Positions 4,723 through 58,499 of a stretch of 64,000 bases of DNA are shown piece by piece. This DNA is from Podarcis filfolensis (Eukaryota). The stretch lies in NCBI GenBank assembly GCA_964270895.1, contig OZ185440.1; one strand, written 5' to 3'. The notes beneath the pieces were generated by a model. It saw only the letters and a list, made by a program, of their open reading frames with translations. It was not told the DNA's origin and did no database searches. A program made the translations under genes and the position numbers. Position 1 is the first letter of the stretch. Each line of letters starts with the position of its first letter.

Positions 4723-4762
4723 CAACAGCGGCAACTTGACCTCTTGACTATAACCAACCCTG
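4723..4762 (+). CDS. AGBL4: Internal coding exon of AGBL4/CCP6 (equivalent to human exon 6), 40 nt, phase 0 in, phase 1 out
   Basis: tttgtttttcAG|CAA CAG CGG CAA CTT GAC CTC TTG ACT ATA ACC AAC CCT G|GTgagt translates to QQRQLDLLTITNP. This matches the recalled human AGBL4 segment QQRKLDLLTITSP, also a 40-nt exon. Splice sites are canonical and the position upstream of BEND5 matches the known arrangement. Confidence 0.9.
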
Positions 4763-7700
4763 GTGAGTAAGCCACAAGGCTCAGCTCTTTTTATGTTTTC
4801 TTAAAGAGATGGTTGTCTGAATGTGTCTCTTTCTCCCCTCCCTGACATGCAAAATGAAAAACACTGTTCACCAGAAAATCTTTAACATAATAACAACTGA
4901 CAGCTATATTGTGCTTGGTAAAGCCGCGGGCAGTTATCCGTTCACAGAGCTGCCTCTTCAGACCTTTACTCTGTGAATTTGAGTGCTGATATTTCTTTAA
5001 GCCTCCTGGGGTTACTGTTAGTGGTATGTCTGCAGGGTAGATATGCTATAATTCACAATGTATGTTCAAGTATCACAGAAGCATTCCATTTAACTCTCTG
5101 CAGTGGTAAACTTAGATATTTACTAAAGAACAGAGGAAGCCGATATTATCATTGCTCACTGCTGGAAAGAGAGAATGTGTTTGTCATCTTGAAAAATATA
5201 TTATTAAAAAATACTACATGAAAATAAAATGTTTCTGAAAACCGCTTTCTGAAGAACATACTAGCATGGCTATTATTAAGTGCTACTTGTCCGTTTAGTA
5301 CGGTGGCGATTAATCATGCCAATAATGTTCATACTAGTTTTGTTTGTTTCCTGCTAAGTGCTCAAAACAACAGAATTGGCCGTGTGGGGTGAAGGCTGGA
5401 TGACTCTGCTTAGCAGACACGGGATATTGCAGTAGCTGCATGGCACACCCCATTCTGTGTCGTCGTAGCTAAGCATTGGAGTAAGTCTGAGTTGTGGGTA
5501 ATAAATAGAAAAAAACTGAAAGCTGATACCATGTAGCATTAATGGCAAGGATCCAAATCCAAAGCATTTGGCTTCTTCTGTTCTACTCTGAGAGCATGGT
5601 GATCATGGTGCATTGGAGGATTAGAGCTGAAGAAGGCTATTGCAGCCCAAGGGAGATCCCTTGAGACCTTGTATTGTCTTGTGCAAAGCTTCTGGCATAT
5701 ATTGCTGCCACCTCACCAAAAAGAAAACTCCAGCATAGAACAGAGGCAGTGTGGTGTTACCAAGCCTACACATATCTCAGGTTACGCCTTATGTTTTAAC
5801 AGATCACTATATAGGTGTAATATTTTGAGATCTTGGGTCTAGAGAGGTAGTGTGTCATGAAGAAGTTGTACTGTAGTCCTATTACTAGGGAAAATTAGCA
5901 AGGACCACTGAATAACAATTTAGGTTTTAAAAAAAGTTTATTATAACAAGTACCAAAAGAATCAGAAGGTAAAATGCTGATGCTGCTTGAGACTCCAAAA
6001 TGGGATAATCACAAAACTTAAAATGGTAACAGGGCTATATACAGACTGAACAACTCCCATGTGAGCTGGGTCAACAGCTTATTTGCTGCTATAAATGAGA
6101 TAGATGGAGGCAGGGAGCGTTATGGTTGACGTGTGAGAGTGGAGAGTGGTACTAGGGGTCTTGTAAACTGCATGGGAGCCTTAGATGTACCAGACTGAAC
6201 AAAAATGATGGGGTTTGGGCCTCGTGAGGGAAGAATAATCAGTGTCATTTGTGAAATAGAAGAGAGAGAAGTAAACAAGAGTTACAGATATGACTACAAT
6301 TCCAAATGGCCCCACCCAAGCCTGTATGTCGGGGGGAGGGATAGCTCATTGCACTCAAAAACTTGAACATACAAAATTGCCTTAGTATATCCAATACTCT
6401 ATGCTCTGTCTTTAAAAACTCATTTAAACATGAAAATGTAAGATTATCTCCATTTCATTAATTTGTGACTCACACATGGATAATTTTCAGGTGGCTTTCA
6501 TTTCTGCTAGAGCTGTTTTATTGTGTCAAATTATAGATGCAGTTCTGCATTGCTCAGTTAATTTTTCACTGGTTAGAAAATAATATGTTAACCTTCCTAG
6601 AGTTAAATGGGATGATATGTGAGATTTACTGTATTTCTCCTTTGATTGAGGCTTGCTTTCCTCCATACCACTGCCTAGGAAACCGCCGTGCAAAATTAGA
6701 TGAAAAGCAAAGCTTCAGGATGTGTTTTTGGGGAAAAGTTGCTTAAGAACAAATTCCACTATTAAAACTCTCTGAAAAGCCATTCCTATTACAGTCCTGA
6801 ACATTCTGGACGCTTCTGACTAATTGAAGCATGAAAATAATATGAACTCAAAGTCATGAAGCTATAATACACCTATTAGTAAAAATGATACAGGGTAATA
6901 AAATGTGACAGAAAGTTGTTCACCACTGAAACTCATGCTCCAACTATTCTTAATAGGCCATGCTAATTATTACTACATTGATTCTGATCAAAGTACACGT
7001 CAAGGGATCCTGGCTGAGTTTTCAAACAACCACACATAATTACTCTTCATGTTTGTTGGTGAGAGCTTCATAGGCTGTTGTATTTTAAAATGAATTCTTA
7101 CATATCTTCCTATTAATGACAGTCTGCGCTGAAGAAAATATAATAATGCTCAGAAGAAGAGGGCAAATAAATTAGCAGGTAGGGAAGTACGTTAATCTGT
7201 TTGCGAGGTTAAATAGTAATTCTGGAGATAATGTTTACACAACTCTATGGAAGCTGGGAAGAGGGATTAGTTTTCAAGGCTAGTAGATGAGACCTTGGTC
7301 TTATGCATGTATTTTCTCGGACGTACATTCCACCAATATCAAGGGGATTGCAGCCCTAAGCCATTACTGCTCATGTAATCATTACATCTTAGTTTTCCTG
7401 TTTTTAATCAGCAATGGTCTGCTTTGCACAAACCGCTGCTGGGGTGGTAGACCTGTGTTTGGACTACACCAATTCAGACTGCTGGTGAGGAGCTGAATGC
7501 TTCTTTACTGGGGTGGGGATAATCCCTACACTCTAATCTGGCACCCTCCATATGTTGTTTGACTACAGCTCCCCTCATTCCCAGCCAGCATGGCCAATGG
7601 GCAGGAGGATTATGGGAATTGTAATCCAAAACATCTTGAGGGCATCAGTTTCGGGAGGGCTGCTCCATTGGTTCTCGGTCTGTGCAGGTCTCATATAGCA

Positions 7701-10700
7701 CGAATGGCACAGCTGGAACAGCTGGGATAATGCCATCATGGAGTTTTCTAATATCATATAATTTCTGAGATAGCAAAAGTAACTTCTGATACTGTGCCTC
7801 ATCTGATTTACCTAATTCCATGACCAGATAAAGTAGTAGCAGTGGAACATGAAGAAGTATCCTAATAAATCCCAACAGACTACAAAAATAGCATCTCAGT
7901 AACTTAGTTCAGCAAAATACTTAAACCTGCTCTGAAATATTGATTCTGGCATTTTTATCATCCACGGGATACGAAAAGATCCTGGGCCTTTTCAAGGGAA
8001 ACCTCAACCATGTAAGAGAATTCACAATAGTATTTATTTATTTATTGCGTTAATATCCTGCCTTTCCTCCACAGAGCCCAAGGCAGCATACATGAGTCCT
8101 CCACACACACCCTCCCATTCATTCTCATAACAACCCTGTGATATATGCTAGGCTGAGAGATAGCAACTGGTTCAGAGACATGGCTGAGATACAGCAATCC
8201 CAGTTGTTCTTTTTCCAAGGTTGCCTCCTATCATGATCCAATATTTGTGTGTCCTTCAAATGAATCCTGGCTGCCTGCAGAAGAATATTTTCACAGTAGA
8301 AAATCAGCAGGCAGGTGTACAGAGGGGGTGGAACAGCAATACCTGGGGAGCAGAGGTTAGGCTTCTTTTTTAAAGCCATAAACGGAATGATTTATTGTGT
8401 GACAGCTTCCCAGTTTCAGGTGCAGAAATGGCCTTTTCAATCCTTGTAGCCTCTGTTCCTCATAGCTTTGCATCATTTTGTATATGTCCACCTAAACTTC
8501 TAAAACCTCTGCCAAATTATAAGTGTACTCTGTTTACACAGCAGAGAAATATCCTATGCGAAAAGAGCTGCGTGGGGGCTATTGCCAGGTTCTCCTATGC
8601 CATTGCTTGTTTGTCCCCTCATGCAGGATATTCATATAAATTCTCCTCCTAGCAGCCATTCCGTTCTGTCACAATCAATTGAGCAAAATGGAGATCCAAC
8701 AGCTATGGACTCCCACCCTATTCTTCCATCTTGTTTGTGCTCTACTGCATTATCATGCTTCATTGCCTCTGTTCTTCAGACCAGCTTTTGCATCTTCCAA
8801 ATCATGATTCCAGAATAAGTCTTTGCTGTTTACATAAGCTCCCTTCACTGGACTCATATTCGAAACAGGAGTTTTATTTTATTTGGGGGTCTGAGGCTGA
8901 AACCTGACAATATGTTGTATGAATATTCACATCTTGAAGTACTTGACCTTCATCTACTTATGTCTATCCAGCCTAAATTATCTTTTCTCTTGTATCATCA
9001 GTCTTTCTCCAAAATAATTTGTATGCTTAGATGACTGGATGATACTTACAATTTTGCAGCAGTTTTAAAAACTAGATGGTCATATACAAAGTGATGCAAG
9101 CCTTGCTAACGATACAATCCAGTATTTTGCTGTGGTAGGCAGACAAATCAGCTACTCTGGAAAGGAGCTTCTATGCATCCCCACAGAATATATAGGGATA
9201 TTATATTTTCTCCTCAGCCCCCCCCCATCTTTGTTTTCTGACTAAATATGAGACTCTTCTTTAACCCAATTTCTAGCATAGCGACTTTCGTTGCTAGGTG
9301 TTATTTTAAAAATAGGAATTATAGCAGAGCTGCTTGTAACACTGTAAGATTGGTCTTTTTGCTTGCTTAACATTTAGTTTTGGTGCACACACACAGTATA
9401 TAGGAAACCTGAATATTAAGTGTGTGCGAGTGTGTTTTTTTCTGTCGGGAAATGGTTTTTCATCAAGTTAAATAAAAACCATAGAGAAGGCATTTGAAAA
9501 GCTAACACCATTACTTTTGAAATCTTTCTGCAACACCTTATTATTATTCTAGGTCACTGTGATGTTTCCATGCACCTTGGCATGTCCCTTTAATTGGATC
9601 CTTGCCTACGAAGGTCCAGCATAGTTGCATTGAAAGCTGACATTTCCAACTAACTGACCTTTTCAGGCCCAGTGATACTTCTATAATGATTATCCCCTTG
9701 CATTGTTTGGACACAATACCACATACTTCACAGCACATAAAGAATATGGTCTTTGAAAACTATTCAAAATTTCCAATCTCAAGTTAGCAAAATGAGAAAA
9801 TTGGGTACAAACATTCATCAGAAGTGTTATTGTGCAGGTATCGATTTGAATGCCCTTTCATTTCTCTGGGAAAAAGTGTTGTAGTATAGAGTTCTAAATT
9901 AACTTTTGTTCTGTTTTTTTTTTCTCCCACTAACTATAAAAAGGTCAAATTCATTCATAAGCCTGAATAGATTTGCTGGATATAAGCAATAAGATAACAA
10001 TCAACCTTCAAATAACCTTTAAAGAGACAGTATCTTCCTCTATGAACAATAATTGATCTACTCATTAAGCAGGAGGGAATTCTTTCAGGCTCACCTAAGC
10101 AAAAAAAATGTATAGGAAAAGGACACTATCTAAAACAACAAGGAAATGAAGTTTTAATATCAGAAATGGTTTAATTCTGCACATGTCAGTGACGTCAAAG
10201 GCCTGTTCAGACCTTTATATATTAGAAATAAAAGCCTATATTGCTGGGTCATGGATGGAGATATTACATGTTGAGAAAATATAGAATCTCTTAGTATAGA
10301 GATAGTTGTTACTGTCTACACACTTCATGAAAGACCAAAGGAATGTATAAGCCCTTGACTCATTTCCTGATCTGAATGTGCCTCCAGGGGAAGAAATGGT
10401 ATCTGAACAGGCCACTAAACAACAAAAGGTCACGGTTGTTGTGGTGCACATATTGCCTTTTCAATAGGACAACAAAATAATGAGAATTCTCTGACTATCG
10501 AGTGTTTTGGAGAAGGAAATGGGCTCATTTCTCCTTTCATTCAGGTCCATAGTGGCAGGAAGGTGCTAAGATAGTGGCACATTGTCACTTTCTTTTCACA
10601 CTTAATGGCTAACTTTTAAAAGTGACCACTCCTTTCTTCTGATAGTACTCACCTTTGTCTAGTCATGGTAAATCAAAACTCCTTAAGATTTGTAGACATC

Positions 10701-12180
10701 AAATCAGTGATACCATGACAGGATCTCATGAAGCTTCCTTGATAGAATACATTGTGTTCATCTAGTCCAGTATTGCCTCCACTGTCAGTGACTCTTCAGG
10801 GTCGTGGGTCTCTAATGTCTTTTTACTGAAGCACTGTAACAGCCCACAGGCATAATTTCAGGATTTCTGTTTTAATGTTCGGCTTAACGTTTTACTGTAT
10901 TTTTATTGCATTTGGATGCTATGTACTGACCTTTTGCTTGCGTTTCTATTGTTATAATTTGTGTGAACCACTTAGAGATTTTGTTATATTAAGCAGTATA
11001 TGAATTATTAAAATGAATGCAGATAAGCTGGTAATGGAACAAGTGAGGAACTGCATTTTGGGGGGCAAAGGCAGCTAAAGGTAGCTGAGATGGATGGATT
11101 AATGTGGGCAGCTGTGGCTGTGCTACATTATCTTTTCCAAACATACGGTATGGAAAGTTCTGATCACTGTTCTGATCACTAGGTCCATGAAAGCTACTCT
11201 TCTTACTATTTTGTATCCTTCATAAGTAAAAGGACCATTTTTAACCTCATAAAGGAATAAGATGACTAAAGGAATAAGATGACTAAAATGTTCCCGTTCC
11301 TTGATGAAGTATATTTATGCATTTGCAAGGCTCTCTATAAAGTACTAATAATTAATATAAAAGCTTTAGTGTCCACTTATAAATTTTGCCAGGAAATTTT
11401 AAGAATTATGCTCTGTCAGCCCTTTCTTCTTTTTTTACAAAATGAATACTTAGCATTACCATATTCCATCTTCGACAAATAAGTGTGACATTTTTAATGA
11501 TTCATTTAAGTTGCCGGCGGGGGTGGGGTGGAGAGAAAATGAAACCTTTGAGGTACCAAGAGATGTAAATGTTGTTTTTCCACATTTTATGATTCCCAGA
11601 TGCCTCCTCTAATTGCTTTGCTAACCCCAAGTTTATGAAGTTATTTTCCAGAGTCAAACTCATTTGTATACATGTCAGAATATAAGCTGAATTTTAAAAA
11701 TAAGACCTCTGGATTAGAATTCAGGAATGATAAACAAATTCATTTTGAATGTATTTGCATGCAATTTACATGTGACAAAATGCACCAATATGCGCCTTTC
11801 ACATACAGGTCCAGCATCTGTTTAACATGATGGAATAGCATGAGGGGATTTTGTGTTGCTTTATAAAATCAAATAAAATGATGGATGCTAAAATTCAATG
11901 AGTAAAAAAGACTGGTGAGGGTAGATAAGAGTGTAGGGAATCTATGAATACTAGTTGCATCATCTGCAGCTTTCAGAATAGAGATTTTTGTACCAGTTCT
12001 ATACCTCTCTATTGCCATAGAATCACAAGGCACTTATTATTTATTTCCTAGAAGTAAATAATACTTCTCATGCCTCATACACTTTAAAAAATGGGCCTCT
12101 TTTTCTCTTTGAATTAATATATATGAAAAGATGAAATGATGGCTTCTGTTTGGAATAGCTCTAGAAATCTACAAACTTTG

Positions 12181-12202
12181 GGATGGATGGATGGATGGAT
12201 GG
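12181..12202. repeat. (GGAT)n tetranucleotide repeat
   Basis: Direct reading. (GACT)n also occurs at about 4029-4050 and (TTTG)n at about 22520-22543. Confidence 0.9.
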
Positions 12203-12924
12203 ACAGAATTTACTCTTTGCAAAATAGGATTAAAATGCATCATGTGCTTAAAGTAGGGTTGCCATATTTCAAAAAGTGAAAATCCATACAGAAAAGTTTT
12301 TGAGGTTTTTTTTTGGGGGGGGAGCTTTTTTTAGTTTTGCACTAGCTTCACTTAATTTTTAAATACCACTGTGTGTATTTGAAATGTTTACATAGTGCAG
12401 ATCCAAAAGCAATTTGAGATTATTTTCTCCGTACTGAAACTCTACAAGGTCCAAATGTAAATTGATAGTACTTTAAGAAATAAAGAATTATAAAGAATTA
12501 ATAATCACAAGTGACAGTGGGGATTTGGATACAGATTTTGTAGGCCCATAGAATTTATATGCGTAGAAACTAGTCTGCTAAAGCAGACTTCGCATAAACG
12601 AAGTTTAAAAATAATTATTTCCTATCCCCCCCACCAAATATGTCTCTTGCTCAATTCAGGTCTGGTGACATACGTACAGCTACATAGTGTTCTTCAAAGC
12701 TGTATTTAAACAGTTGATTGGTCACATAATATCAGTAAGTTACCAGGTTGTGAAGAGATTCACAGGTTCTAACCCCAAAGGCTGAGGCAGTTTGTGCTTC
12801 ATGTTTCATTCAGTGCCACACCAACACAGTTTGAAGCCTGCATAGTGCCTTCCCCTCCTGCTAGGGCCATCACTTTAAAATAATAATAATAATTAGTAAT
12901 TATTTTACTATTTTTTAATTATTA

Positions 12925-14424
12925 TTTTTTTGCTCTTCTGATAAGATTCCATATCAACAAAATATGAACAAAAATAATACAATAAAGAAAAATATATGAA
13001 ATAAAGAAAAGAGATCTTTCTTTTTTAAAAGATTTCTAAGAATAGACAAAAAATCAGAAAACATTCCTTGACCTATCAGCTTCCTAACCTCTCCTTCCAT
13101 GGTTCTGTTTATCCCCTCTTTTCCACATGTTTTCTTAGTTCACCCTGTCTATCGCAACAACTTTTATATACTTTATTATTTCTTACTCTGCTGAAAACCT
13201 TACCATCCTGCTAGGTAAATTGTTTGCTTATAGTACTTCTCCATATTTTCCGTAAACAATATCCAGTCCTCTTTGTATCTTTTGTCATTTTGGTTTCTTC
13301 TTCTAGTAGTCATCCTTGTTAGGTTCGCATATTCTAACAGTTTAATATGCCATTCTTCTTTTGTTGGTACTTTAGCGGTTTTCCATTTTGGGGCTAATGG
13401 TACATTGGCAGCTGCTGTTATGTATAGGAACAAATTTCTCTCTCTTTTTTTGTGACTTCTGTTGTTATTAATTCCAGGAGCAATGCTTCTGGATTTTTAG
13501 AAAATGATTTTGTAAACTTTTTTTTAGTTCAGTATAAAATCATTTTCCAATAATTTTTGATTATGCCACATGACCGCCACATGCAGTAGAAGGTTCCTTC
13601 TGCTATTTTACATTTCCAACAGTTACCCTTTATTGATTTTGACATTTTTGCTAATCTGTTAAGTGTCAAATGCAACCTATGTTAAAACGTGTAGTATGCT
13701 GTAAATCTTATATTTACTCTCCAAAGTTGTTCCCATAATATAAAATCAATATTGTGTCCAATGTCTCTAGCCCAATTTATCACTGAAGACTTTACTGTTT
13801 CCTCCATTGCCTCCCACTCAAGTAATAAGTTGCATATTTTTTATAATTTTTTGACCTTGGATCCTAACAGCTCCTTTTCAAACTGAGTTTTTTTCAGCAA
13901 ATCCATATTTTTTGTCTATCTTAAATGTCCGCCTCAACTGGTAGTAACGAAACCAGTCTGTCACTTGGTATTTTATCTTTTCATACTCTATTTACATTCC
14001 TCCCCAGTGATGTTTAGAAGGTCTTTGTATGTACTCCAGTTTGTCTCTATGTTGATTTTTTTTTCATGCCAGGGCTTATGTAGTTTTCTATATTTTCCCC
14101 ATACCCTATAAAGATTTTTTTTTCTGATTATACGGTTTGAAAAGCTCTCATATACCCTTGCCTTTCTGTACTACAGGCACGCATGCCATCCAAATTTTAA
14201 ATCATGCCCTTCCTGGTCTAACAGATGGCTGTTCTTTAGTAAAATCCAGTCTTTCAACCAACATAAGCATGATGCTTCAAAATATAATTGTAGGTCAGGG
14301 AGAACAAAACGACCTCTCTCTTGGGTATCATTCATAATTTTATGTTTTATCCTGGGTTTTCTCCCCTGCCAAATAAACTTAGAAAGATCTTTCTGCAATG
14401 CTGCTTTTGATGGATAGGAAAGCT
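12925..14424 (-). mobile_element. L1-clade LINE 3' fragment (degenerate ORF2 C-terminus plus 3' UTR)
   Basis: Minus-strand peptides QKDLSKFIWQGRKPRIK...LPDLQLYFEASCLCWLKDW (14171-14398) and ...KWKTAKVPTKEEW...DWILF (13200-13433) resemble vertebrate L1 ORF2. Ends are approximate. Confidence 0.8.
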
Positions 14425-16124
14425 AGTGATGTGAGCCTGTCATGGTAGACTGCAAGTGTGTTTTGATGAGCTTCAGTTTTGAAAAGATAGGCTCACCAAT
14501 GGCAACTGTCACTTGAAGTATCAGGGGAATTTGTAGCGCTATCCAGACATTTTGGAAGCCACATGGTTGTACTGCAGGGTGTCTTGTGGTGAGCCTTTTC
14601 CATGAGCTAAAATGTGAAAGAGGTTGCTTCACTGAACACAACGATCTGTACCACCATTGTCAGAGTGGTGGCCATCGGTGATGGCTATGGATAGATCAAT
14701 ACCTTGGGTGTTAAGCATCTGTTGTGGAAGGTTTTCAAGGTTGTATGAAAATCCTCATATATGTGAGATTCAAGTTGCTCAAATAACACTGCTACACTGT
14801 TAGTCTGTAATCCAATGTTGTTTACTTGGAAACAAGTCTATATAATATTTACTCCCAATTAAATCTGGGGTAGGGTTGTCAGACTTCAATCTACAATCAC
14901 TTGTAGAAAAGCCTAATAGATCAGTAAGGCAATGCTAAAATAAGTTGGCTGTAAATTTCTGCTGTATTTAAGTTAATTTTAAACAATACTATTTTGCATA
15001 AAATAAAGTTATGCCCTTTGTCAGGCACACTTATTGTTCTAGCTCCATAACATTCACACATTTAGGGTAAATGAACCACCTTGAGATCTTTGGCCTTCTG
15101 GAGTGTGTCAGATTAGTTCATGCTTATTGAACAGTGTCTTTGACTCTTGTGAATTACAGTAATACCATTGGATGTAGTCCATTAATAACAACACAAGTGA
15201 GACTGCAATTTACATTAAAAGCATAAGAAGTAAAGGTAAAAGTCAATTATATTTAGAGATGGGATAAAATTACTATATATGTACGGAATCCAGAGTTGAT
15301 TATCTATCTTTGTGGTAACTTGTTATAAAAGACATTTTCCATAAAATATTTAGCTGGCTGGCCCTCAATTTCTGTTGCAATTGGCTTTCCTTCATAGCAT
15401 ATATACGTACATATATAATTGCTCTTGCCTGGCAACAAATGCTACTTCCAGTTATCTGTTTTTAGATACTTGGGTTGTAGTCTTATACACACTATATAGT
15501 CCCATACACATTTAGTTGAGAAGAAGCTTTTAGGCCATAGTGGGACAAAAGTTTGAGCAGGCTCAAGGTGAAGTGTGTGGATAACCAAAATAAATTGTTC
15601 CCAATTAAGCACAAGAGTGTCTTAGAAAGTTCTGCGCCTCTCAAAATGCAAAAACATTCATATGGTTTTCTCTGGAAGCAATTTGTTGCCAGACCCATTA
15701 TACCTCACTTTAGAAACTTCTTCCTAGTTTCCTTTCTATCTTTACTTCTTCCAAATAATATTGCTGTAACTAGAGTTAGTGACACTGCCTAGTTCCAGGT
15801 ATGAGGTCAAGGCATTTAAGCACCTTTGAGAGTGAATGCTAAGGCTTGAACCTAAAGCATTTGAAATAAAAGGGAAAGACTGTATATCCTTACCTGGTGT
15901 CAAATGAACTTTGCTCTCCTGTCACCACAATGGATGAGTTTAGAGCAAATGATCCCACTTGCCCACGATGTCCCACTTTGGTGATCTCCCTCCCTCTGTA
16001 GCTCTCCTGTGCCCCTGAAACAAGAAAATGATCATTGCTACAAGCAAGTGAAAACTTGGGTCTAAACCATGGTTTGTTTGTTAGTTTGTTACATTTCTAT
16101 CCTACCTTTCTTCAGGGTGATGTG

Positions 16125-16290
16125 CATAGTTCTCTGTCTCCCCATTTTATCCTCAAAGCAACCCTGTGAAATAGGTTAGGCTAAGATAGTGACTGGACAA
16201 CCAGTGGGCTTCATGGTTGAGCAGGGACTAGAATCCCCATCTCCCACATCTTAGTCCAACACTCTAACCACTACAACACACTGGCTCACA
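16125..16290 (-). mobile_element. Old MIR/core-type SINE remnant
   Basis: cccattttatcctcaaagcaaccctgtgaaataggttaggc...tagtccaacactctaaccactac. Related fragments near 8090-8200, 26960-27120 and 44120-44290. Confidence 0.55.
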
Positions 16291-41858: not shown

Positions 41859-41867
41859 CTGTGTTTT

Positions 41868-44827: not shown

Positions 44828-44846
44828 TCCCACTCAGAGGGCGCCA
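44828..44846 (+). promoter_or_regulatory. Candidate CTCF site upstream of the BEND5 island
   Basis: tcccactCAGAGGGCGCCA matches the 3' core of the CTCF consensus (CCASYAGRKGGCRS). The 5' part is imperfect. Confidence 0.3.
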
Positions 44847-46494: not shown

Positions 46495-46505
46495 GTGAGG
46501 CAACC

Positions 46506-46542
46506 GGGGGGCGCGCGGGGACGGCGGGAGGAGGGGAGGGGG
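46506..46542 (+). other. G-quadruplex-forming motif just inside BEND5 intron 1
   Basis: GGGGGG-cgcgc-GGGG-acggc-GGG-agga-GGGG-a-GGGGG: five G-runs of 3 or more with loops of 1-5 nt. Confidence 0.6.
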
Positions 46543-48651: not shown

Positions 48652-48676
48652 ACACACACACACACACACACACACA
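48652..48676. repeat. (AC)n microsatellite
   Basis: Direct reading. Confidence 0.95.
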
Positions 48677-48879
48677 TCCTGAGAGTTCAGAGAGTTGGAT
48701 CTCAGAGTTCAGAGAGTTGGATCACAGTGATATTTTACGTGTCACATTGCAGACCTATTAAGATGGCCACAGAGGCTGATGGATTCTGAATAATTCCTGA
48801 GAGTCTTTGAGATTTTGTTGTTGTAGCTGCTGGTCCTCTTGAAGCCCTGATCACATTATGGAGTTCTGAAATGATGTGG

Positions 48880-49170
48880 ACTGTAAATTCACTCCTCTTA
48901 TTATTGAGCTGAGGCTGTGCATTGCCGTAGCTTATCCAATAGCTGATGAAGAAGGTGGGGGCAATGTCTAGCATACAAATATGACTGGACAAAAGTAAGA
49001 GCTCATATTTGAGACCACTCTCTGGCAGCGATACTGCCCAACGAGTATTCTGTTCTACCACTATTGTATCATCTCAGTGCCATATACTGATGTGTCTTTG
49101 AATGATGAGATGTCCCCAAATGAGTCCACAGAAAGATCTTAAGGAAACCTTGAAGGCCTACTTGGGGATA
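48880..49170 (+). mobile_element. Possible highly degenerate RTE-like LINE 3' remnant
   Basis: ctgcccaacgagtattctg (LP.RV.F) and a ...RKILRKP/LK-like segment recall the RTE RT C-terminus. Frames are broken. Confidence 0.3.
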
Positions 49171-49301
49171 AAATTGCTGACATTCATCACAGCCTGTACA
49201 GCACAATTAAAACAATTTAGTCACAGATTTAGGGTGTTGCCTAATTATTTTCATAGTACATGCTCAGGAAGTGGTTATTAGTGTCAACTACTGGCTGGTC
49301 A

Positions 49302-49631
49302 GGGACGTGGGTGGCGCTGTGGGTTAAACCTAGGACTTGCTGATCAGAAGGTCGGCGGTTCGAATCCCTGCGACGGGATGAGCTCCCGTTGCTCTGTCCC
49401 AGCTCCTGCCAACCTAGCAGTTTGAAAGCACGTAAAAGTGCAAGTAGATAAATAGGTACTGCTCCAGCGGGAAGGTAAACGGTGTTTCCATGCGCTGCTC
49501 TGGTTCGCCAGAATGACCTGGAAGCTGTACACCGGCTCCCTTGGCCAATAAAGCGAGATGAGCGCCACAACCCCAGAGTTGACCACGACTGGACCTAATG
49601 GTCAGGGGTCCCTTTACCTTTACCTTTACCT
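49302..49631 (+). mobile_element. Sauria-type SINE with 13-bp TSD, in BEND5 intron 1
   Basis: Starts GGGACGTGGGTGGCGCTGTGGG and ends (ACCTTT)n. TSD TACTGGCTG(G/A)TCA at 49289-49301 and 49632-49644, one mismatch. Confidence 0.9.
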
Positions 49632-49709
49632 TACTGGCTGATCACTAATATTACTTCCAGTACCAGATATCAGTCAGATGGTAGCTGGAGAATTACACAT
49701 TCCTAAATA

Positions 49710-49937
49710 CAGTGGTACCTCAGGTTAAATACTTAATTCGTTCTGGAGGTCTGTTCTTAACCTGAAACTGTTTTTAACCTGAAGCATCACTTTAGCTAAT
49801 GGGGCCTCCTGCTGCCGCCGCACCGCCGGAGCACGATTTCTTTTTTCATCCTGAAGCAAAGTTCTTAACCTGAAGCACTATGTCTGGGTTAGCGGAGTCT
49901 GTAACCTGAAGCATATGTAACCTGAAGCGTACCACTG
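49710..49937 (-). mobile_element. MITE family A, reverse orientation, 228 bp
   Basis: TA|CAGTGGTAC...GTACCACTG|TA. The body is the reverse complement of the copies at 29881 and 50711. Confidence 0.9.
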
Positions 49938-50530
49938 TAATGTTGATTATTTAGATCAGGGTTTATGCTTAGGTTTGTCACAGAAACTGATTTGTTGGTT
50001 CTGATAACCTGCTGTGGAAGGACAGAAGAAGTGTGATACTGATAATTTTCTGGATACCTCGGTGGTATTTGATACTATCAGCCACACCATCCTGGACCAG
50101 GTTATTGGAATGTAAGCACTTGGTGGATTCCAGAAGGTTGTCCTGGGGTCCTTTGGCTGTGGTTAAGGACAAAGGTCCAGCTGTAAAATGGAGCTCAGTC
50201 CAAACAAGATGGGATTTTTATTTATTTAAATATTTTAAAGTTACACTTCAAGGTGGGATGCAACCTAAAGCAGGTTCTGTAAGTAAGTAGTCTGCCTGAC
50301 TGAGGATCTGTTCTGCTTAGGGTTGCATGCCCTCTTAAGTCTGCAGTACTGTTAGACCCATCCTTTGCTATGAACACCCAAGTCGTGTTGGTGGCATGCA
50401 GCACTTTTCACAAAGTGCTTCAGACTAGAGTGCCAATTGCTACTCCTTCTGAGTGGACGTAGCCTGGCCATGTTTATCCTTGTACCATTCAGGCTTGACA
50501 ACTACAATACATTAGGAACAATACACTAGG

Positions 50531-50710
50531 AACATAGGAAACTGCCTTATACCAAGTCATGTTATTGGTCCATCTTGCTTATTGACTGTATTGATCTGTA
50601 TTGACTGGCAGATGCTCACCACCATTTCAGGTAGGGAACCTTGCATCCCTACCTGAAGATTCCAGGGACTGAACCTGCATTCAAGGCTGGTGCTCAACTA
50701 CTGAGCTATA
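50531..50710 (-). mobile_element. Degenerate Squam3/MIR-related SINE
   Basis: aggaaactgccttatac...ggtccatc...gactggcag...ctgagcta is the reverse of a tRNA-headed SINE with an L2-type tail. Confidence 0.6.
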
Positions 50711-50952
50711 CAGTGGTTTCTAAGGTTACATACGCTTCAGGTTACATACGCTTCAGGTTACAGACTCCGCTAAACCAGAAATAGTACCACGGGTTAAGAA
50801 CTTTGCTTCAGGATGAGAACAGAAATTGTGCTTCGGCGGTGCAGCGGCAGCAGGAGGCCCCATTAGCTAAAGTGGTGCTTCAGGTTAAGAACAGTTTCAG
50901 GTTAAGAATGGACCTCCGGAACGAATTAAGTACTTAACCCAAGGTACCACTG
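50711..50952 (+). mobile_element. MITE family A, 242 bp, inserted at the head of a SINE
   Basis: TA|CAGTGG...GGTACCACTG|TA, with an internal repeat of GTTACATACGCTTCAG. Confidence 0.9.
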
Positions 50953-52879
50953 TAGTTCTTTTTCAGAAGTGTCTCATATTGAGAACATATCTACCATGCT
51001 GATGATGGGCATGCGTTATCTTGTCATCTTAATTGACTTCCTGTATGTTTCCAGGTGGTGCTGTTGCCTTGATCCCAGGATTTATAGGTTATGCCAAAGA
51101 CCACCGGTTCTGATTATCTCTTAAGAGATTTTTTTCAGTCTTTTGCTTGTTGAGGTTAGGTGATGTGCCTTCTCTGTAGTAGTTTCCAGTCTGTGGAATG
51201 ATTTCCACTAGGCACATGCTGGATGATTTTTTTATTTTATTTTTTACTAATTTCTTCTATGCCATGCAAAAATGGCTTTAGTTTATTGTTGCTTTTTCAG
51301 TTCTGCTGCTTTTATATCTGAAATTTCAACTTGATTGCTTCCTGTGCTGCCACATGTTATTTTGAACTTGCTTATTCATATTTGTTTGTTTTGTTTTTAT
51401 TGTTAAGCTACATGTAGCTAGAAAATACCTTTCTGAAGTGGGATAATACAAGTCTATCAGATAAATAAACAAATCCTTTCTATATGTGCTGTGTAAAATC
51501 ACAATCTTCTATCTGAAACAGCACACCCCCCCCCACTGCCATACAGGTCTTGCAGAATTATAGAAAGTGCTTACATCAAGGATAAGAAGGAAGGCAAAAG
51601 GGGGAGAGAAAAAAAAAACTAGCCTTTAAAAGGCCTAAGCTACTGAACTATGATTCAAAAACTGGAAAGAGTAAATTAATATCATTACTGCTCCTTAGTT
51701 GTTTGCCCCCCTCCCCCTCGTGAATACAAGTTTGTTTGTAGCTTTAAAATATTATTTTTTAGTATATCTCCAGAGTGAGAAAACTACTTGCAGCACACAA
51801 GAATCCCAAGGGTGTTGTTATCTAAGAAAGGTACACATTGAGCAGAACATTCTGGGGGCATGCATAGAGAAGAAGCTCTTCTTTCTATGTATCCATTCTC
51901 AAGTTTGGGCATTATGAGCTGGCAGTTGAGGTGCCATTTTTAAAAAACAAAACCCCCCTCTGTTTTACAGAGTTCGAAACCAAAATGTCCTTTACCCTTT
52001 TAGGATTGTTTGATCCCAAAGACACGCTGAAAAGTTGGGGGTGTGGTGACCCTGTTGGCAGGACTGAGAATTAACAATCCTCTGTGCCGCAAGAGGAAAA
52101 CCTTATATAATCTAGAATAACGCTCTGTATTCAAAATGCCAAATAGCAGGATTTGTGCTAAACACACTTAGGGGGCAAGAAGCATTTCAGGTCACAGGAT
52201 TATTTATGCAATCAGTAACATTAAAAATCCCCATATCTGTATTAAAATATGAGGTGAATCTCATATCTGTTGCAAGACAGGAAGTGAAGCTCTAGCTTGT
52301 AAAAGGTACCTGTTGTTCTATAAATCATTATATATGCTGAGTACAACATACCTAGATGCTAAGTTCAATCAGTGCAGAACAAATGGTAGTTAACAACAGT
52401 GACAATTCCTGATTAGTATCAATTATTTAATCAGGGTGGCCCACTGCAAAGTTTTCACTGCCAGACTGTAGTTCAAACATTTGCTGTAATTTCCCCCAGG
52501 GTTGTGACTTTGATTCTATCATGTATATTTTACTGAAAGAACAACACCCTTCTATGACTACAGCATAACAATTAATTATTCGTATCCAAAATATAGGTAA
52601 TTCAGTGGTGATATTGATGCAAAAATTAGGGTTTTTTTATTGTCAGAAACTTCAAGCAAATGCTTCATACAGTCTTTTAAAAACTCTTCCCTTCCTGGTT
52701 GGCTGGAGGTGATTTTTACCTGCTGCATGCCTGGTTACAAACGTGATGTAGGAAAATAAGAATTCTCAGTATGGGGAATGTTGACTCTCTATTGAGAATG
52801 CCTGATTTGGGGAAGACCCTACTCTTCTGAGGGGTTCCCCACCTCAAAAGCAGTAATACAGAATTTCCAACATTCATTA

Positions 52880-52950
52880 GACTCATAGAAGTGTAGAGTT
52901 GGAAGGGACCCTGAGGGTTTATCTCGTCCAATTCCCTGTAATACAGGAAT
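52880..52950 (-). mobile_element. CR1-type 3' terminal fragment
   Basis: catagaagtgtagagttggaagggaccctgaggg...gtccaattccctg, the reverse-complemented CR1 tail. Confidence 0.65.
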
Positions 52951-53514
52951 GACAAGGATGACAGCAGTTTGGACTAGTGAAGTGAAGGTTCTTGGAGTAG
53001 GCTGAGTTAGCTGTCTACCACTTGCTCATAATCTTGCTCTTCATTCATTTATTTCATGATTGTAAATATTGAACTTGTACAAGGTGTGGTCCATTCTGGC
53101 GGAGTTTTGTGAGCTAGGAAGTTACATATTGCAGTGTGCATTTGAATTTCTTGATAGGTATTCTGCCTGTGCCTGAGGTGGGTAATCTGTGGCTCTTAGA
53201 TGTTGTTGGACTCCCAACCCCAGTCACATTGGTCAGTGATCAGAAATGATACACTGATGGGGTTTGAACTTAGAATGGCTGACAAAGAAAGAGAGGTGGG
53301 GCAGCTCTATGAAAAGGATGAATTTCATGTGATGGATCATTAGGAGTGAAATATGCCTTGATACATATATATAGTAAAAACTGTGCTTGGAATACTTTAT
53401 CTAGTTCTGGTTGTCACATTCAAAAATGTAGAGCCAGAAAACCACAGCTAAAATTATTGAGGGGAAATATTGGAATGTTTTGATGAATAAAGGGGGACAT
53501 GATAGTAAAAAAAA

Positions 53515-53745
53515 CCATGCACGGCGTGAAGAAAGTGAATATGGAGCTCCCCCCCCAAAAAATATTATATATATTAGAATTGTTGTCACTCAGTGAAGCG
53601 GAATGGTGCGAGATTCAGGACAGGCAAGAGGAAGTATAGCACAGAGTTAAACTATGGAAGTTGCTACTACAAGATGTAGTGATGACCAACTTGGTTGGAT
53701 TTAGACATATTCATTCAGGATAAGACTATCATTGGCTACTAGACA
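53515..53745 (+). mobile_element. CR1 ORF2 C-terminal remnant
   Basis: Degenerate MHGVKKV...RFRTGKRKY...VKLW..L.QDVVMT..GLD.F..DK.I.GY* pattern. Confidence 0.65.
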
Positions 53746-55468
53746 CCACAGCTGTTATTACTCTTTCAAATCAGAAACAGGATGCCTCTACCCAGCAACT
53801 TGCTGGGTAACATGAGCGGGAGAGTAATTTTGTGCTAATGTCCTGCTTGTAGACTTTCATAGGCACCTGGGAAGAAAATGCTGACTTGATGGGTCTTTGG
53901 AATGATCCAGCAGGCCAGGTCTTGCATTATTATAATTGGAGTTGTAGTCCAACAACATCTGGAGGACCACAGTTTGCCAACCCTAGTTCCTAGCCTACAA
54001 GGTTTGGATTCGCTGATGTGATCCAGCTGATATGTTGAAGTTGTCCTGTGTAAAAATTGGCATACAGTAAAGTCTTGAGATTGCTTCATCATCTATCTGT
54101 TACAATGCACTACATGCTTGTTATTCTATTGCCCTATCTGCTTTTGACAGCTTTATGATAATATGCTAGCTTGATTATCAGCTGTCTATTTTGCTTTGCC
54201 ATGTATTGGGCTGTGCATGAATCCACACACATCTAATTGAACACGGAGAACCTGCTTCCTTCTGTTTTCTTCTTTTAGTATTAGTAATACTTTCTTTGGG
54301 TTTCAGAAGGATTTCAGGAGCTATCAGATACCAAAGAAGGCTACAAGCACTAACAGATTCTTGAAACATCCCTGCGTGGAGTGTTCATGGGAAGCTGACA
54401 AAGAAAAATAGGGCGTTCTTGAGCAGTTATAGTAACAGCCAGCTTAAAAATTCTCTAAAGTTCAGTAGACCATGATGTTCTGCAGCTTCATTTTCTCTAA
54501 TATCAGGTTCTCATAATTAGTTTGTTTGTAAGGCTTAGTAGGTGTTGACGGGAATGGGTTGGTTAACGATAATATAGATTGAGCCATTGCTTTCTTCTGA
54601 TGTTACTTGACAACATTTTGCTTTCACCATTATCCAAAGCAACCAAAATAAATAAAACAAATCAGTTTTAACACTGGCAGGATCTTTATATGGTCCCAGA
54701 ATACTTGTACTTCCTTGGTTTGTGCTCCATGTTGCAAAAATCTCCCAATAGTTGCTTGCCTGTCAGAACTGCTTCCAGGTGCCCAGATAAAGAAATCTTT
54801 AAATTTGAGGGATTTCTTTACCTTCCTTTCTGGCTGTTGAAAACATGACTGACACTTTTACATATAGATAGACAGGTTCGTGAAAATTTTGAGAGCCAGT
54901 AACTCTTTTTACACCAATCCAAGGCATAAAAAAGCTGACTTGCACTTCTGCTTCATCACTATTTGCTTTCAGGATCAATAGAAAATCAATGAGAATTATG
55001 TTATTAATATTTATTTAAAGTCTTTTTCATAAATCTATTTTGAATTACCCTTTTTTTTCTTACATCCGTAAGCCAAGACTGGACATGTCAACAGGGATTA
55101 TCTCCACCTCCCCAACGTTAAACCACAAATATTCCTCTTCCCTCATCACAAACTGCTCTTGATTTTTCTTTCTTTTAAAGGCAGTTTTCTTTGCAAAACC
55201 CAGAGTTACCTGGTGTTTGAGAAACACATCCAAGGCTTATGTGGGTTTGCAGAAGTAGTCACACACTTATTTCAAACCTAACCTATTTTGTGTCATAGAA
55301 TGTAGCTATGCTGTGTTGCAAGAATGTATTTGTTGATACAACAAAGACTGGAGATTGGGCATTAGCTTCCAACACTCTCTTTAAAATTCAGAAGCTGAAA
55401 GGTTGTCCAGTTTTTTGCCAGTTAAGTAGTATTTTTCCAAGACATGCCATACCTAATATAGTCTAATG

Positions 55469-55594
55469 CAGCCTTCCCCCAACCTGGTGCCCTCCAGATG
55501 TTTTGGTTTACAGCCCCCCTCTCAGCTGCAACTAATCAGGCGTGATGGGAGTTGTAGTTCAAAACATCTGGAGGACACCAGTTGGGGAAGACTG
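55469..55594. mobile_element. hAT-like palindromic MITE
   Basis: Arms CAGCCTTCCCC-AACCTGGTGCCCTCCAGATGTTTTGG and its near-perfect reverse complement. Decayed 8-bp flanks GTCTAATG/GTTTAGTG. Related copies near 7540-7660, 34700-34790, 37250-37320 and 53900-53985. Confidence 0.7.
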
Positions 55595-57582
55595 GTTTAG
55601 TGGACATAAAATTTCAAAGCATAAAAGATGCTATATTACTGATAAAGTGAGGTTAGAATGTTTGTGCTGGTTTTTCCACAACATATTGTAAACACATGAT
55701 TTAATACATCTTTAGGAGTTGCTGATTAGGAAAAGAACATGCACGGACACACTGTGTTCTAAGAAAAAATTCCATGAAGCTCTCTGAAACACTTCCATGT
55801 GGATGCTGCTAGTACCCTATGTACTTAGTTTCATTTTCCTGAAGCAGCAGCTTTCAGTGGGCTCACAAATGGTTAGTGTTGACAGTGCAGAAAAGGAAAA
55901 CAAAGGTAAATCAGGGTTTAATGAGGAGCACAGCATTCATTAGGGATGAGTTACACAGATGAATGCAATTCCTTTTTGTCAAAGACAGAAATGGATCTCT
56001 CAACTAGTGAAATTGTATCCTGAGGCAGAGTAAAGAAAATACATACAAAAGATGCAAAAAAAAGGGAACCAAGACAAGCTAAAATGAACTGCAGATAGTC
56101 ATAAGAAATACCAAGCCAGATGCAAGAAGTAGTGATGAAATAAAATTCTAAACAGCAATCCTCAGAGTCCTCTTCTTAGTGCATTTTATAAGTCTGCCAT
56201 TTTTAACAACACATCAGTCTGATTCCTAGGTCTGGATAATCGCATTTTCATTTCCACAGAGAAAAAATGTAAAGGAGTCATCAGATTGATGTTGTCATAA
56301 GGAGCAGGAGATTAAAAATGAGAGAGTGGGGGTGGGAAAGTTAGGTTTACATAGAAGAAAGGAAATTACAGATAAATATTGATCAGAATTTTAAGTTTGT
56401 CTCACTCATATATTACAAAATAATCATAGGTAAATATATTAAAATTTGCAGGGGTACACCAAAGCAAACTTCCTTTCTTTACAAGATTTATTAGACACCT
56501 TTCAAAAGATCAAAGATGCATACAATAAAAACATTGTCAAGTAAAGTCAGCCCATTAAAAAAATAATAATTAGAATTGATCCAAAAATCAAGAGCAGCAG
56601 AGCAATAGATAATATAATCCCTTGATAAAAGCTGAAAGAGCATGAGAACAAAAAAGCATTAACAAATGAAAATATATTAACCATCTTGCAGAAAGCAGAG
56701 GGAGATTATGCATCTCAGTAAGCAGAAACATCAACCCTGTTTGATTTCTTGGATGTCTTGATAATATCTGCCTTGGTCCCAAATTATGTGTTGCTTGCCA
56801 GGAGCTGAGTGACAAATGAAAGGTATAGGAAGGAAACTATCAGGGCTGATATGGGTTCTGAACAGTCTGCCTGGAAATTGCACCTGAAGGCTCCAGAGTT
56901 CTGCAAATAAACATGCACACTCCTGTCTTGGTTCTCAAGCCACTGGACTCCAGTGGTGGCCTCTGCTTCAGAAAGCAGTAAACATAGATAGAATTGGAAG
57001 GTCCCATTCAGGCCTCTCCCTGTCCCTGGGATCCAGAAAGGACAGTGCTGCTTGTTGTTGCCACTTAATCTTTTCCTTAATCTTGCCAGAGCAAAGGAAA
57101 TGGCATATTTATATATAATGAAAATTTTGACAGTTTTATTTTGAATTGGGCACAGTAAAACAAGGTCTAACTCCTTTCCACAGCAAACCCACTTGCCTGG
57201 ATATTTATCAGTTTGTTATATATTCACGAAATGGCTCGTCCTCCTATTGGAAGACCGGACAAATGCTAGAACATTAGCAGTGGCCAAGTTTTTATTGGTG
57301 GTTGCAAGAACCAATGATCCCTATATTCTGAACGAAATGCTTGTTTAACCTGGAGGTAGGCTGTATGAATTGTCTATTGCTTTGTAACGATTTATTGGGT
57401 CTCTGGACCATAATAAAGGTTGATGATAATGGTTCAGTTTGTATGGCACATTAAACCAAAGTGTAATACACACTGCACAGACATTCCCACAGCACCTTTC
57501 CCTTGCACTTCCTGCTGCCACACGCCAGATAAAACAACCCAGAGTCTGTGTTGTCATGTCATCTGAACCTAGGCTCATGGTT

Positions 57583-57656
57583 TTTCCTCCAAACAAACCA
57601 TGAGCTGTAAGCCAGTTACAAACCTTAGTTACGGTTCATGGTTTGTTTGGAGGAAA
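57583..57656 (+). repeat. 28-bp hairpin with 18-nt loop
   Basis: 57583-57610 pairs with 57629-57656: 26 Watson-Crick pairs plus 2 G-U pairs as + strand RNA. Confidence 0.8.
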
Positions 57657-58365
57657 CACATCACAATCCAGACTTGCTTTGTCCACAGTGCAGCGGGGGA
57701 GAAGAAGAGTGCTGTGGGAGCTTTTGAGCACTATGCACTAGTACATTAATGTAGAGAGCAAACTGGGCAAGTGACAGTGGCAGTGACAGCTTTTTTTTTT
57801 AACAATGCTATAGTGGTAATGTTGGGAGAGTGGTCTCTGTTTTTCTCCACCTGACTCTTGTAAGTTGAGCTGCTACCTGCTGCAGGTGTCAACAGTGCTG
57901 AAAGAACTTCATTTCACAGTATGCCAGCTGCTTGGGAATTTGCTATAACTGTTCTGAGAGATAGGGGAGAGGTATTCTTAATGCATATATGCTGGAGGAA
58001 CGCCAGCATATCTTCTTTAAACATTGCCTCTTCCTCTTTTTTTTGGTAAAAGAATTGTCCTTTTGTAATAGGAAGTTTAAAATTTTCATACATTTAAATG
58101 AAACAACACAAATACAAATGTGGTGATTGTATTTTTTCTGTCTTGGAAAATACAGAATTAAAAAAATGTAGAATTATATGTGGCACTCTTCATTTTGGTG
58201 TTAATGTTTAGAGTCTGTGGAGCAATTGAATTCCACTGCACACTGAAGACAGTTGAGCATGGGAAACTTTAAGTGGTCTGGCCTCAGTGATACAGCATTT
58301 GAATGATAAGTTTGATGAAAAGTTTGATGAATTTGACCATTTTTATTTTTATGTAAATTTTACAG

Positions 58366-58499
58366 AAGATAAAACTGATCTTGAAAACAGTGTGATGCAG
58401 AAGAAAATTAAAATCCCCAAGCTTTCTCTCAATCACCTAGAAGAAATAGGAGAAATTACAGATTATGGGGATGAAGATATGGAACTTAGACACTGTAAG
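58366..58499 (+). CDS. BEND5: BEND5 coding exon 2 (134 nt, phase 1 in, phase 0 out)
   Basis: G|AA GAT AAA... gives EDKTDLENSVMQKKIKIPKLSLNHLEEIGEITDYGDEDMELRHCK, matching recalled human EDKSDLENSVMQKKIKIPKLSLNHVEEDGEVKDYGEEDLQLRHIK. Donor AAG|GTATTG at 58499/58500. Exons 1+2 total 354 nt, or 118 codons. Confidence 0.95.

What the first reader, a model, noticed from the sequence alone, without database searches (positions are those of the whole stretch)
4723..58499. Phase-matched host/guest junction: in-frame AGBL4 exon -> BEND5 exon 2 chimera is possible
Seen: the AGBL4 exon ends ...AAC CCT G|gt (phase 1) and BEND5 exon 2 begins ag|AA GAT (phase 1), on the same strand. In AGBL4 pre-mRNA, BEND5 exon 1 is a first exon with no obvious acceptor, so BEND5 exon 2 offers the first gene-grade acceptor found downstream of the AGBL4 donor. 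Splicing 4762->58366 gives ...LTITNP-EDKTDLE... in frame. Known: the CCP6 zinc ligands (HPGE motif onward) are encoded after this exon, and the BEN DNA-binding domain is C-terminal in BEND5. Inference: a chimera would join the CCP6 N-terminal region to the BEND5 coiled-coil and BEN domain, and would divert AGBL4 transcripts to the BEND5 poly(A) site, acting as a possible off-switch for tubulin deglutamylase output.
Basis: partly seen in the sequence, partly recalled or inferred. Interest (0 to 1): 0.75.

Follow-up and report, generated by a model that had tools for sequence, protein, structure and literature searches.

The report
In-frame AGBL4–BEND5 host–guest chimera

Summary
All three exons lie on the + strand:
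- 4723-4762: a 40-nt AGBL4/CCP6 coding exon that ends in phase 1.
- 46275-46494: BEND5 exon 1, which ends in phase 1.
- 58366-58499: BEND5 exon 2, which starts in phase 1.

A phase match alone is expected about 36% of the time. The predicted junction (..LTITNP|EDK..) is nevertheless already present in public gene models:
- Podarcis raffonei BEND5 isoform X2 and Lacerta agilis X1.
- Pogona, a snake, an amphisbaenian and a gecko.
- Chicken and many other birds, alligator, many mammals, echidna and frogs.

Of the 293 proteins fetched, 94 carry this junction alone. Two related in-frame forms are also annotated:
- BEND5 exons 1-3 joined to the AGBL4 catalytic half (dog, tailed frog).
- AGBL4 with BEND5 exons 2-3 as an internal cassette (canids, seal, a rodent).

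The chimera keeps the CCP6 N-domain, lacks all zinc ligands, and carries the BEN domain.

Usage level and the "off-switch" idea therefore remain untested. No paper in the library describes the chimera.

Verdict: real, ordinary conjoined isoform, known to databases; modest interest.

The parts
4723..4762 (+). AGBL4/CCP6 coding exon, 40 nt. Encodes QQRQLDLLTITNP plus the first base (G) of the next codon. Starts in phase 0, ends in phase 1.
   Evidence: tblastn gives 13/13 identity to the AGBL4 part of the Rhineura chimera. Corresponds to residues 219-231 of Podarcis muralis CCP6 X1.
4763..4768 (+). Donor gtgagt of the AGBL4 exon. It is the 5' splice site of the host intron and of the chimeric intron.
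   Evidence: Rough matrix score 10.7 bits.
4763..58365 (+). Stretch removed in the host-to-guest chimera (53,603 nt). It is the first part of the much longer AGBL4 host intron and contains the BEND5 promoter, exon 1 and intron 1.
   Evidence: No other AGBL4 exon and no BEND5 exon 3 were found in the window.
44000..48000 (.). CpG island around the BEND5 promoter and exon 1.
   Evidence: GC 0.51-0.55 and CpG observed/expected 0.52-0.64, against about 0.1-0.25 elsewhere.
46275..46494 (+). BEND5 exon 1 coding part (ATG to donor), 73 codons plus G. Ends in phase 1. The donor is CAG|gtgagg.
   Evidence: Matches the N-termini of BEND5 proteins.
58346..58365 (+). Acceptor region of BEND5 exon 2 (T-rich tract interrupted by purines, then cag).
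   Evidence: Rough matrix score 3.5 bits.
58366..58499 (+). BEND5 exon 2, 134 nt. Starts in phase 1, ends in phase 0.
   Evidence: The peptide is identical to the P. raffonei X2 and Rhineura X4 models.
58495..58500 (+). Alternative donor gtaagg, 5 nt upstream of the main exon 2 donor. Using it shifts the frame.
   Evidence: 5.8 bits against 4.0 bits for the main donor. The alternative-frame peptide MGMKIWNLDT (58465-58494) is the N-terminus of Lacerta agilis BEND5 X3.

Best explanation
The window holds one AGBL4 (CCP6) coding exon and, 41.5 kb downstream on the same strand, the first two exons of BEND5. BEND5 is nested in the AGBL4 intron that follows that exon.

The AGBL4 host intron, BEND5 intron 1 and BEND5 intron 3 are all phase 1, and each upstream exon ends in G. 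Any host/guest exon combination across these boundaries therefore stays in frame.

Transcripts started at the AGBL4 promoter can pair the donor at 4762 with the BEND5 exon 2 acceptor at 58366. They then run to the BEND5 stop and poly(A) site. The product has two parts:
- CCP6 residues 1-231: the Pepdidase_M14_N domain plus the first 36 residues of the M14 domain, with no zinc ligand.
- BEND5 from exon 2 onward: the coiled-coil region and the BEN domain.

Shown:
- The exons, their phases and their strand.
- The same junction in gene models of the same genus and many tetrapods.
- The domain content of the product.

Inferred:
- The junction is used in this animal.
- It arises because the exon 2 acceptor is transcribed long before the distant AGBL4 acceptor.
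- It is a minor conjoined isoform rather than a tuned switch.
For: - Exons, splice sites and phases were read directly.
- The exact junction ..LLTITNP|EDK.. occurs in these models:
  - Podarcis raffonei BEND5 X2 (574 aa) and Lacerta agilis X1 (573 aa).
  - Pogona X2 and X4, Pantherophis X4, Rhineura X4. The gecko model reads ..TITNP|DDK..
  - Chicken X1, alligator, dog, Tasmanian devil, echidna, and the frogs Mantella and Rhinophrynus.
- Of 293 fetched proteins:
  - 94 carry this junction alone.
  - 15 carry it together with the return junction.
  - 4 join the same donor to BEND5 exon 4.
  - 2 are guest-to-host.
- Several annotation sources agree: RefSeq XP models, Ensembl-derived UniProt entries and third-party annotations.
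- Residues at all three boundaries are almost always E, D, V, A or G. These are codons that start with G, as expected for phase 1 with a terminal G.
- Pfam on the parts gives:
  - PF18027 at residues 67-154.
  - PF00246 at 196-397 in CCP6.
  - BEN at 476-553 of the chimera.
- NCBI names plain AGBL4 proteins 'BEND5 isoform' in P. raffonei, Zootoca and the first P. muralis release, so it merged the two genes there.
Against:
- No listed holder of the stretch is on record as RNA.
- Gene models can be propagated between species by protein alignment. The count of species therefore overstates the number of independent observations.
- The newer P. muralis release names the AGBL4 proteins CCP6 again. 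This may mean the chimeric link was weak there.
- A tandem donor 5 nt upstream in exon 2 would break the frame in part of the transcripts.
- No paper in the searched library mentions the chimera.
Confidence: 0.72

Rival explanations
1. Annotation artefact. The chimeric models arise from gene-prediction pipelines chaining two overlapping same-strand genes, or from copying a chimera from one species to others. No such mRNA exists in lizards.
For: - All support here is gene models, with no reads.
- NCBI's naming is unstable. AGBL4 proteins are called BEND5 isoforms in one P. muralis release and CCP6 in the next.
- Many bird entries in the large cluster come from homology-based annotation.
Against: - The junction types differ between lineages: to exon 2, to exon 4 in birds, the cassette form in canids, seal and a rodent, guest-to-host in dog and tailed frog, and cryptic exons in fox and others. 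Projection of one template would not produce this variety.
- Independent pipelines (RefSeq, Ensembl, third-party) all contain the junction.
- The splice sites used are the genes' own canonical sites.
Confidence: 0.1
2. Regulated off-switch. Splicing into BEND5 exon 2 is controlled in order to divert AGBL4 transcripts to the BEND5 poly(A) site and so lower deglutamylase output.
For: - The chimera lacks HPGE and everything after it.
- Host genes are known to be truncated near nested genes through alternative polyadenylation (PMC11694760; PMC3192792).
- The arrangement and the junction are conserved from frogs to mammals.
Against: - No expression data were obtained.
- Cassette models show that transcripts entering exon 2 can return to the AGBL4 catalytic exons.
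- Conservation of the phases is what ordinary intron-phase stability predicts.
- The exon 2 acceptor is weak by a rough matrix.
Confidence: 0.08
3. Functional fusion protein. The CCP6 N-domain joined to the BEND5 coiled coil and BEN domain is a selected product, for example BEND5 expressed from the AGBL4 promoter with an added protein-binding domain.
For: - The form is annotated in every tetrapod class sampled.
- It has an intact ORF ending at the normal BEND5 stop, so nonsense-mediated decay is not expected (inference).
- The complete PF18027 domain is retained.
Against: - The fusion keeps a 36-residue stump of the M14 catalytic domain. This looks accidental rather than designed.
- There is no protein-level or literature evidence.
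- All its exons are shared with the parent genes, so sequence conservation says nothing specific about the fusion.
Confidence: 0.15

Closest known systems
RefSeq and Ensembl chimeric 'BEND5' isoforms, for example Podarcis raffonei XP_053248467.1 (X2, 574 aa), Lacerta agilis XP_033008074.1 (X1), chicken XP_015146714.3 and dog BEND5 X12
   Same: - The junction is exactly the same: the AGBL4 exon ending ..LLTIT(N/S)P joined to BEND5 exon 2.
- The P. raffonei model is identical to the window's translation across both exons.
   Different: They are computed gene models in other assemblies. I could not see their RNA support, and none has been studied experimentally as far as the searched library shows.
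Conjoined genes, also called transcription-induced chimeras or cis-splicing of adjacent genes (reviews PMC6862657 and PMC5704251, listed)
   Same: One pre-mRNA spans two same-strand genes. Canonical sites of both genes are joined, typically skipping the first exon of the downstream gene.
   Different: Those cases need read-through past the upstream gene's poly(A) site. Here the guest lies inside a host intron, so host-to-guest splicing needs no read-through. Only the guest-to-host and cassette forms need the BEND5 poly(A) site to be passed.
Host/nested gene interplay with premature host termination (Kaer et al. 2011, PMC3192792; Montibus et al. 2024, PMC11694760)
   Same: A same-strand nested gene alters processing of host transcripts and yields truncated host isoforms.
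   Different: The described effects are intron retention, exonization of intronic sequence upstream of the nested gene, and cryptic polyadenylation. They are not in-frame splicing into the guest's coding exons to give a two-gene protein.

Membership tests
Host/nested conjoined (chimeric) transcript | Both genes lie on the same strand, with the guest inside a host intron. | tested here: met
The AGBL4 exon at 4723-4762 and BEND5 exons 1 and 2 are all on the + strand. The AGBL4 catalytic exons are not in the window.
Host/nested conjoined (chimeric) transcript | The join uses the canonical donor of one gene and the canonical acceptor of the other, and keeps the frame. | tested here: met
   The donor is CTG|gtgagt and the acceptor is cag|AAGAT, both phase 1. 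The joined protein exists as models.
Host/nested conjoined (chimeric) transcript | The junction is seen in RNA of this organism. | tested here: inconclusive
The only support is gene models from the same genus and other taxa.
AGBL4 / cytosolic carboxypeptidase 6 (M14 family) | The exon sequence matches CCP6 orthologues at the expected position, before the HPGE zinc-binding motif. | tested here: met
   Identity is 13/13 to residues 219-231 of Podarcis CCP6, with HPGE at residue 250. In that protein PF18027 spans 67-154 and PF00246 spans 196-397.
BEND5 (BEN domain-containing protein 5) | Exons 1 and 2 match BEND5 orthologues, and the BEN domain lies at the C-terminus. | tested here: met
   The exon 1 and exon 2 peptides match lacertid and other BEND5 proteins. 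The BEN domain (PF10523) is found in the orthologue's C-terminal part. The BEN exons themselves lie outside the window.
Regulated premature termination of a host gene by a nested gene (off-switch) | The share of truncated or chimeric host transcripts changes with tissue or guest activity, and inversely with full-length host mRNA. | not testable with these tools
   This needs quantitative junction counts.

The most novel reading that the evidence does not exclude
AGBL4 and BEND5 form one conserved compound locus in tetrapods, and its in-frame mixed products are selected. Those products are the CCP6 N-domain joined to BEN, the BEND5 coiled coil joined to the CCP6 catalytic domain, and CCP6 with a BEND5 exon 2-3 cassette. 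BEND5 exons 2 and 3 form a phase 1-1 block, which could reflect an origin as alternative AGBL4 exons, with BEND5 gaining its own CpG-island promoter later. Choice among the forms could tune deglutamylase output or deliver a CCP6 domain to BEN-bound chromatin.
Probability: 0.12. Interest if true: 0.6.

Novelty: already known. Interest (0 to 1): 0.33.

Why it matters
The call was right, but it is not new.

What may still be useful is the wider picture. Three kinds of in-frame AGBL4/BEND5 mixed isoforms are annotated from frogs to mammals. NCBI often merges the two genes under one name. No paper in the searched library discusses any of this.

Two practical consequences follow:
- Anyone measuring AGBL4 or BEND5 expression, calling fusions at this locus, or naming these genes in new genomes should expect shared-exon transcripts and inconsistent gene names.
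- If the mixed isoforms turn out to be abundant in some tissue, they would link a tubulin-modifying enzyme gene and a BEN-domain gene (a family described as neural transcriptional repressors; from my own knowledge, not checked here) in one regulated unit.

Tried and rejected
- **Reads.** No read-level test was therefore possible.
- **Joined junction.** I did not search or lay the joined exon-exon junction.
By my oversight they covered those places. Both returned nothing.
  - Later searches used database proteins, with regions or parts chosen to avoid the exon 2 equivalent.
  - The local tblastn worked beside the places.
  - Cluster look-ups used whole database proteins of other species by id.
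  - No contig that I take for human was fetched. Primate proteins appeared in hit lists, but I did not follow them.
- **Pfam.** BEND5 exon 1 and four repeat-like ORFs gave no family.
- **Other exons.** I found no HPGE-coding exon, no other AGBL4 exon and no BEND5 exon 3 in the window.
- **Literature.**
  - 15 papers name both genes. None of those I opened, and no title or abstract start among those listed, concerns a chimera.
  - No paper contains 'AGBL4-BEND5' or 'BEND5-AGBL4'.
  - The BEND5 mentions in fusion papers concern NTRK2 tumour fusions.
- **Rejected idea.** The phase match is not evidence by itself. It is about 0.36 by chance.
- **Not run.** I left the third word-based protein search, which would have counted guest-to-host forms, unused. 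It would not change the verdict.
Full report
**What is in the window.**
- At 4723-4762 (+) there is a 40-nt exon, ag|CAACAG...CCCTG|gtgagt. It encodes QQRQLDLLTITNP plus one extra base, so it starts in phase 0 and ends in phase 1.
- A CpG island lies at about 44-48 kb. It holds an ORF starting with the ATG at 46275 that reads MYAFVRFLEDN... The ORF ends at ..GCA G|gtgagg, so the last exon base is 46494 and the phase is 1.
- At 58366 a T-rich tract and cag precede AAGAT... This exon runs 134 nt to AAG|gtattg at 58499, so it starts in phase 1 and ends in phase 0.
The intron of the proposed chimera would be 53,603 nt, and BEND5 intron 1 is 11,871 nt.

**Identity of the exons.**
- A library-wide phmmer search with the exon 2 peptide returned BEND5 proteins and genomic ORF fragments.
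- Word-based searches with database proteins returned lacertid CCP6. They were restricted to the BEN region and to the AGBL4 part.
- In CCP6 of Podarcis muralis and P. raffonei the 13 residues sit at 219-231. They are followed by VNLRPG..VVFITARVHPGE, with HPGE at residue 250.
- Pfam places Pepdidase_M14_N at 67-154 and Peptidase_M14 at 196-397 of that protein.
It found no BEND5 exon 3. No HPGE-coding frame is present.
- The alternative-frame ORF of exon 1 is identical over 60/60 residues to the N-terminus of a RefSeq model shared by P. muralis and P. raffonei. The window is therefore Podarcis or a very close relative.

**Is the phase match meaningful by itself?** No. With textbook phase frequencies (0.46/0.30/0.24, which I assumed) two introns share a phase 36% of the time, and three do so 14% of the time. 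By a rough acceptor matrix of my own, the exon 2 acceptor scores 3.5 bits. Of the 3,573 AGs between the AGBL4 donor and exon 2, 611 score as high or higher. 'First gene-grade acceptor' therefore cannot be argued from the acceptor alone. What makes exon 2 special is that it is a real, defined exon.

**The chimera exists in public annotation.** The search with the BEN region listed dozens of proteins named BEND5 isoform X1, X2 and so on, of about 540-610 aa. They carry both PF18027 (the CCP N-domain) and PF10523 (BEN). Their sequences show the predicted junction..LLTIT(N/S)P|EDK.., in:
- dog, echidna, Tasmanian devil and a parrot;
- the frogs Mantella and Rhinophrynus;
- the squamates Pantherophis, Rhineura and Sphaerodactylus (the gecko reads ..TITNP|DDK..).

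Cluster look-ups added Podarcis raffonei X2 (574 aa), Lacerta agilis X1 (573 aa), Pogona X2 and X4, chicken X1 and alligator. The P. raffonei model is identical to the window's translation over both exons.

Sorting all 293 fetched proteins by junction motif gave the following:

| Junction type | Proteins |
|---|---|
| Host-to-guest via exon 2 only | 94 |
| Exon 2 junction plus the return junction | 15 |
| AGBL4 exon joined to BEND5 exon 4 (owl, duck, sparrow, zebra finch) | 4 |
| Guest-to-host | 2 |

**Related forms.**
- *Guest-to-host.* Dog 'AGBL4 isoform X10' and three isoforms of the tailed frog Ascaphus read BEND5 exons 1-3 (to ..LLLRLGS) and then the AGBL4 catalytic half, starting (D/V)NL..VVFIT.RVHPGE.
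- *Cassette.* Canid, fox, grey seal and Onychomys models read the AGBL4 N-half, then BEND5 exons 2-3, then the AGBL4 catalytic half.
- *Consequence for phases.* BEND5 intron 3 is therefore also phase 1, and exons 2+3 form a 1-1 block.
- *Junction residues.* Across all fetched proteins, the residue at each of the three boundaries is almost always E, D, V, A or G. These codons start with G, as expected if each upstream exon ends in G in phase 1. The downstream exon sets the residue whatever the upstream partner is.
- *Gene naming.* NCBI names plain AGBL4 proteins 'BEND5 isoform' in P. raffonei, Zootoca, several birds and a turtle. It did the same in the first P. muralis release, and the later release reverted to CCP6. 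This shows that the pipeline merges the two genes when shared-exon transcripts are modelled.

**How it most likely works.** A polymerase that starts at the AGBL4 promoter transcribes the donor at 4762. It then transcribes the BEND5 promoter and exon 1, which has no upstream acceptor in the annotated models, and then exon 2.

The AGBL4 catalytic exons are not in the window. An earlier, unchecked note places an AGBL4 exon 256 kb beyond it. The true AGBL4 acceptor is therefore made well after exon 2. Pairing 4762 with 58366 is thus possible for a long time before the proper partner exists; this step is inferred.

The mRNA then follows BEND5 splicing to the BEND5 stop. The protein has the CCP6 N-domain and a 36-residue stump of the M14 domain. 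It has no zinc ligand, and it carries the BEND5 coiled-coil region and BEN domain.

I judge it most likely a low-level conjoined isoform. The off-switch idea and a selected fusion protein remain possible but untested.

**What I could not do.**
There are therefore no junction counts.
Searches scanned the whole window by reference against Rfam and with ARAGORN. Both returned nothing.

**Comparison with what is known.**
- The closest known things are the gene models themselves.
- As a kind, this is a conjoined or transcription-induced chimera. It differs in one way: the guest is nested, so host-to-guest splicing needs no read-through.
- Work on host/nested pairs describes intron retention, exonization and premature polyadenylation upstream of nested genes (PMC3192792; PMC11694760). 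It does not describe in-frame splicing into guest coding exons.
- No paper in the library names an AGBL4-BEND5 chimera. The joint mentions in tumour papers concern NTRK2 fusions.

**Verdict.** The feature is real but already present in public annotation, including the same genus. Interest is modest.

Noticed in passing
window 58465-58500: Exon 2 has two donors 5 nt apart: ACT|gtaagg (last exon base 58494, 5.8 bits by my rough matrix) and AAG|gtattg (58499, 4.0 bits). The upstream donor shifts the frame. The alternative-frame peptide MGMKIWNLDT encoded at 58465-58494 is the N-terminus of Lacerta agilis BEND5 isoform X3, so that donor is used in a gene model.
   Followed up: partly
window 46315-46494: An ORF in another frame of BEND5 exon 1 (MRCPCRAC.., 60 codons) is the annotated start of 'BEND5 isoform X5' of P. 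muralis and P. raffonei. In that model exon 2 is skipped and exon 1 joins exon 3. The window matches it 60/60.
   Followed up: yes
outside the window (proteins P0011, P0020, P0024, P0029): Reverse chimeras are annotated in dog and in the frog Ascaphus truei. They read BEND5 exons 1-3 and then the AGBL4 catalytic half from just before HPGE.
   Followed up: partly
outside the window (proteins P0234, P0219, P0201, P0217, P0218, P0233, P0236, P0191, P0195): Cassette forms are annotated in canids, fox, grey seal and the rodent Onychomys, and in an Ensembl dog entry. They are full CCP6 with BEND5 exons 2-3 (about 169 residues) inserted between ..LLTITSP and DNL..HPGE.
   Followed up: partly
outside the window (naming in public records): Plain AGBL4/CCP6 proteins (PF00246 plus PF18027, no BEN) are named 'BEN domain-containing protein 5 isoform' in several species: P. 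raffonei, Zootoca vivipara, Caretta, Aythya, Melanerpes and Pogoniulus. The first P. muralis release did the same, and the later release renamed them CCP6.
   Followed up: partly
outside the window (protein P0207, Vulpes vulpes): A fox model joins the same AGBL4 donor to a different, cryptic exon and then reads a long G+C-rich, proline- and arginine-rich ORF. This looks like translation through promoter-type sequence.
   Followed up: no
window 41462-42206 and 17998-18716: Long ORFs on both strands look like fragments of interspersed repeats (for example ..RGRQRTRWLDS.. and ..LDYCNTLYVGLP..). None matched a Pfam family at E up to 0.01.
   Followed up: partly
window 58001-62000: A second zone has raised CpG content (observed/expected 0.45 and 0.34, against about 0.1-0.2 nearby). 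It starts at BEND5 exon 2 and runs into intron 2. Its cause is not examined.
   Followed up: no
window 29400-29600, 48600-48700, 63540-63700: Translated ORFs show dinucleotide microsatellites: runs of LS/CV, HT and SL/ER repeats, which indicate CT/GT/CA-type repeats.
   Followed up: no
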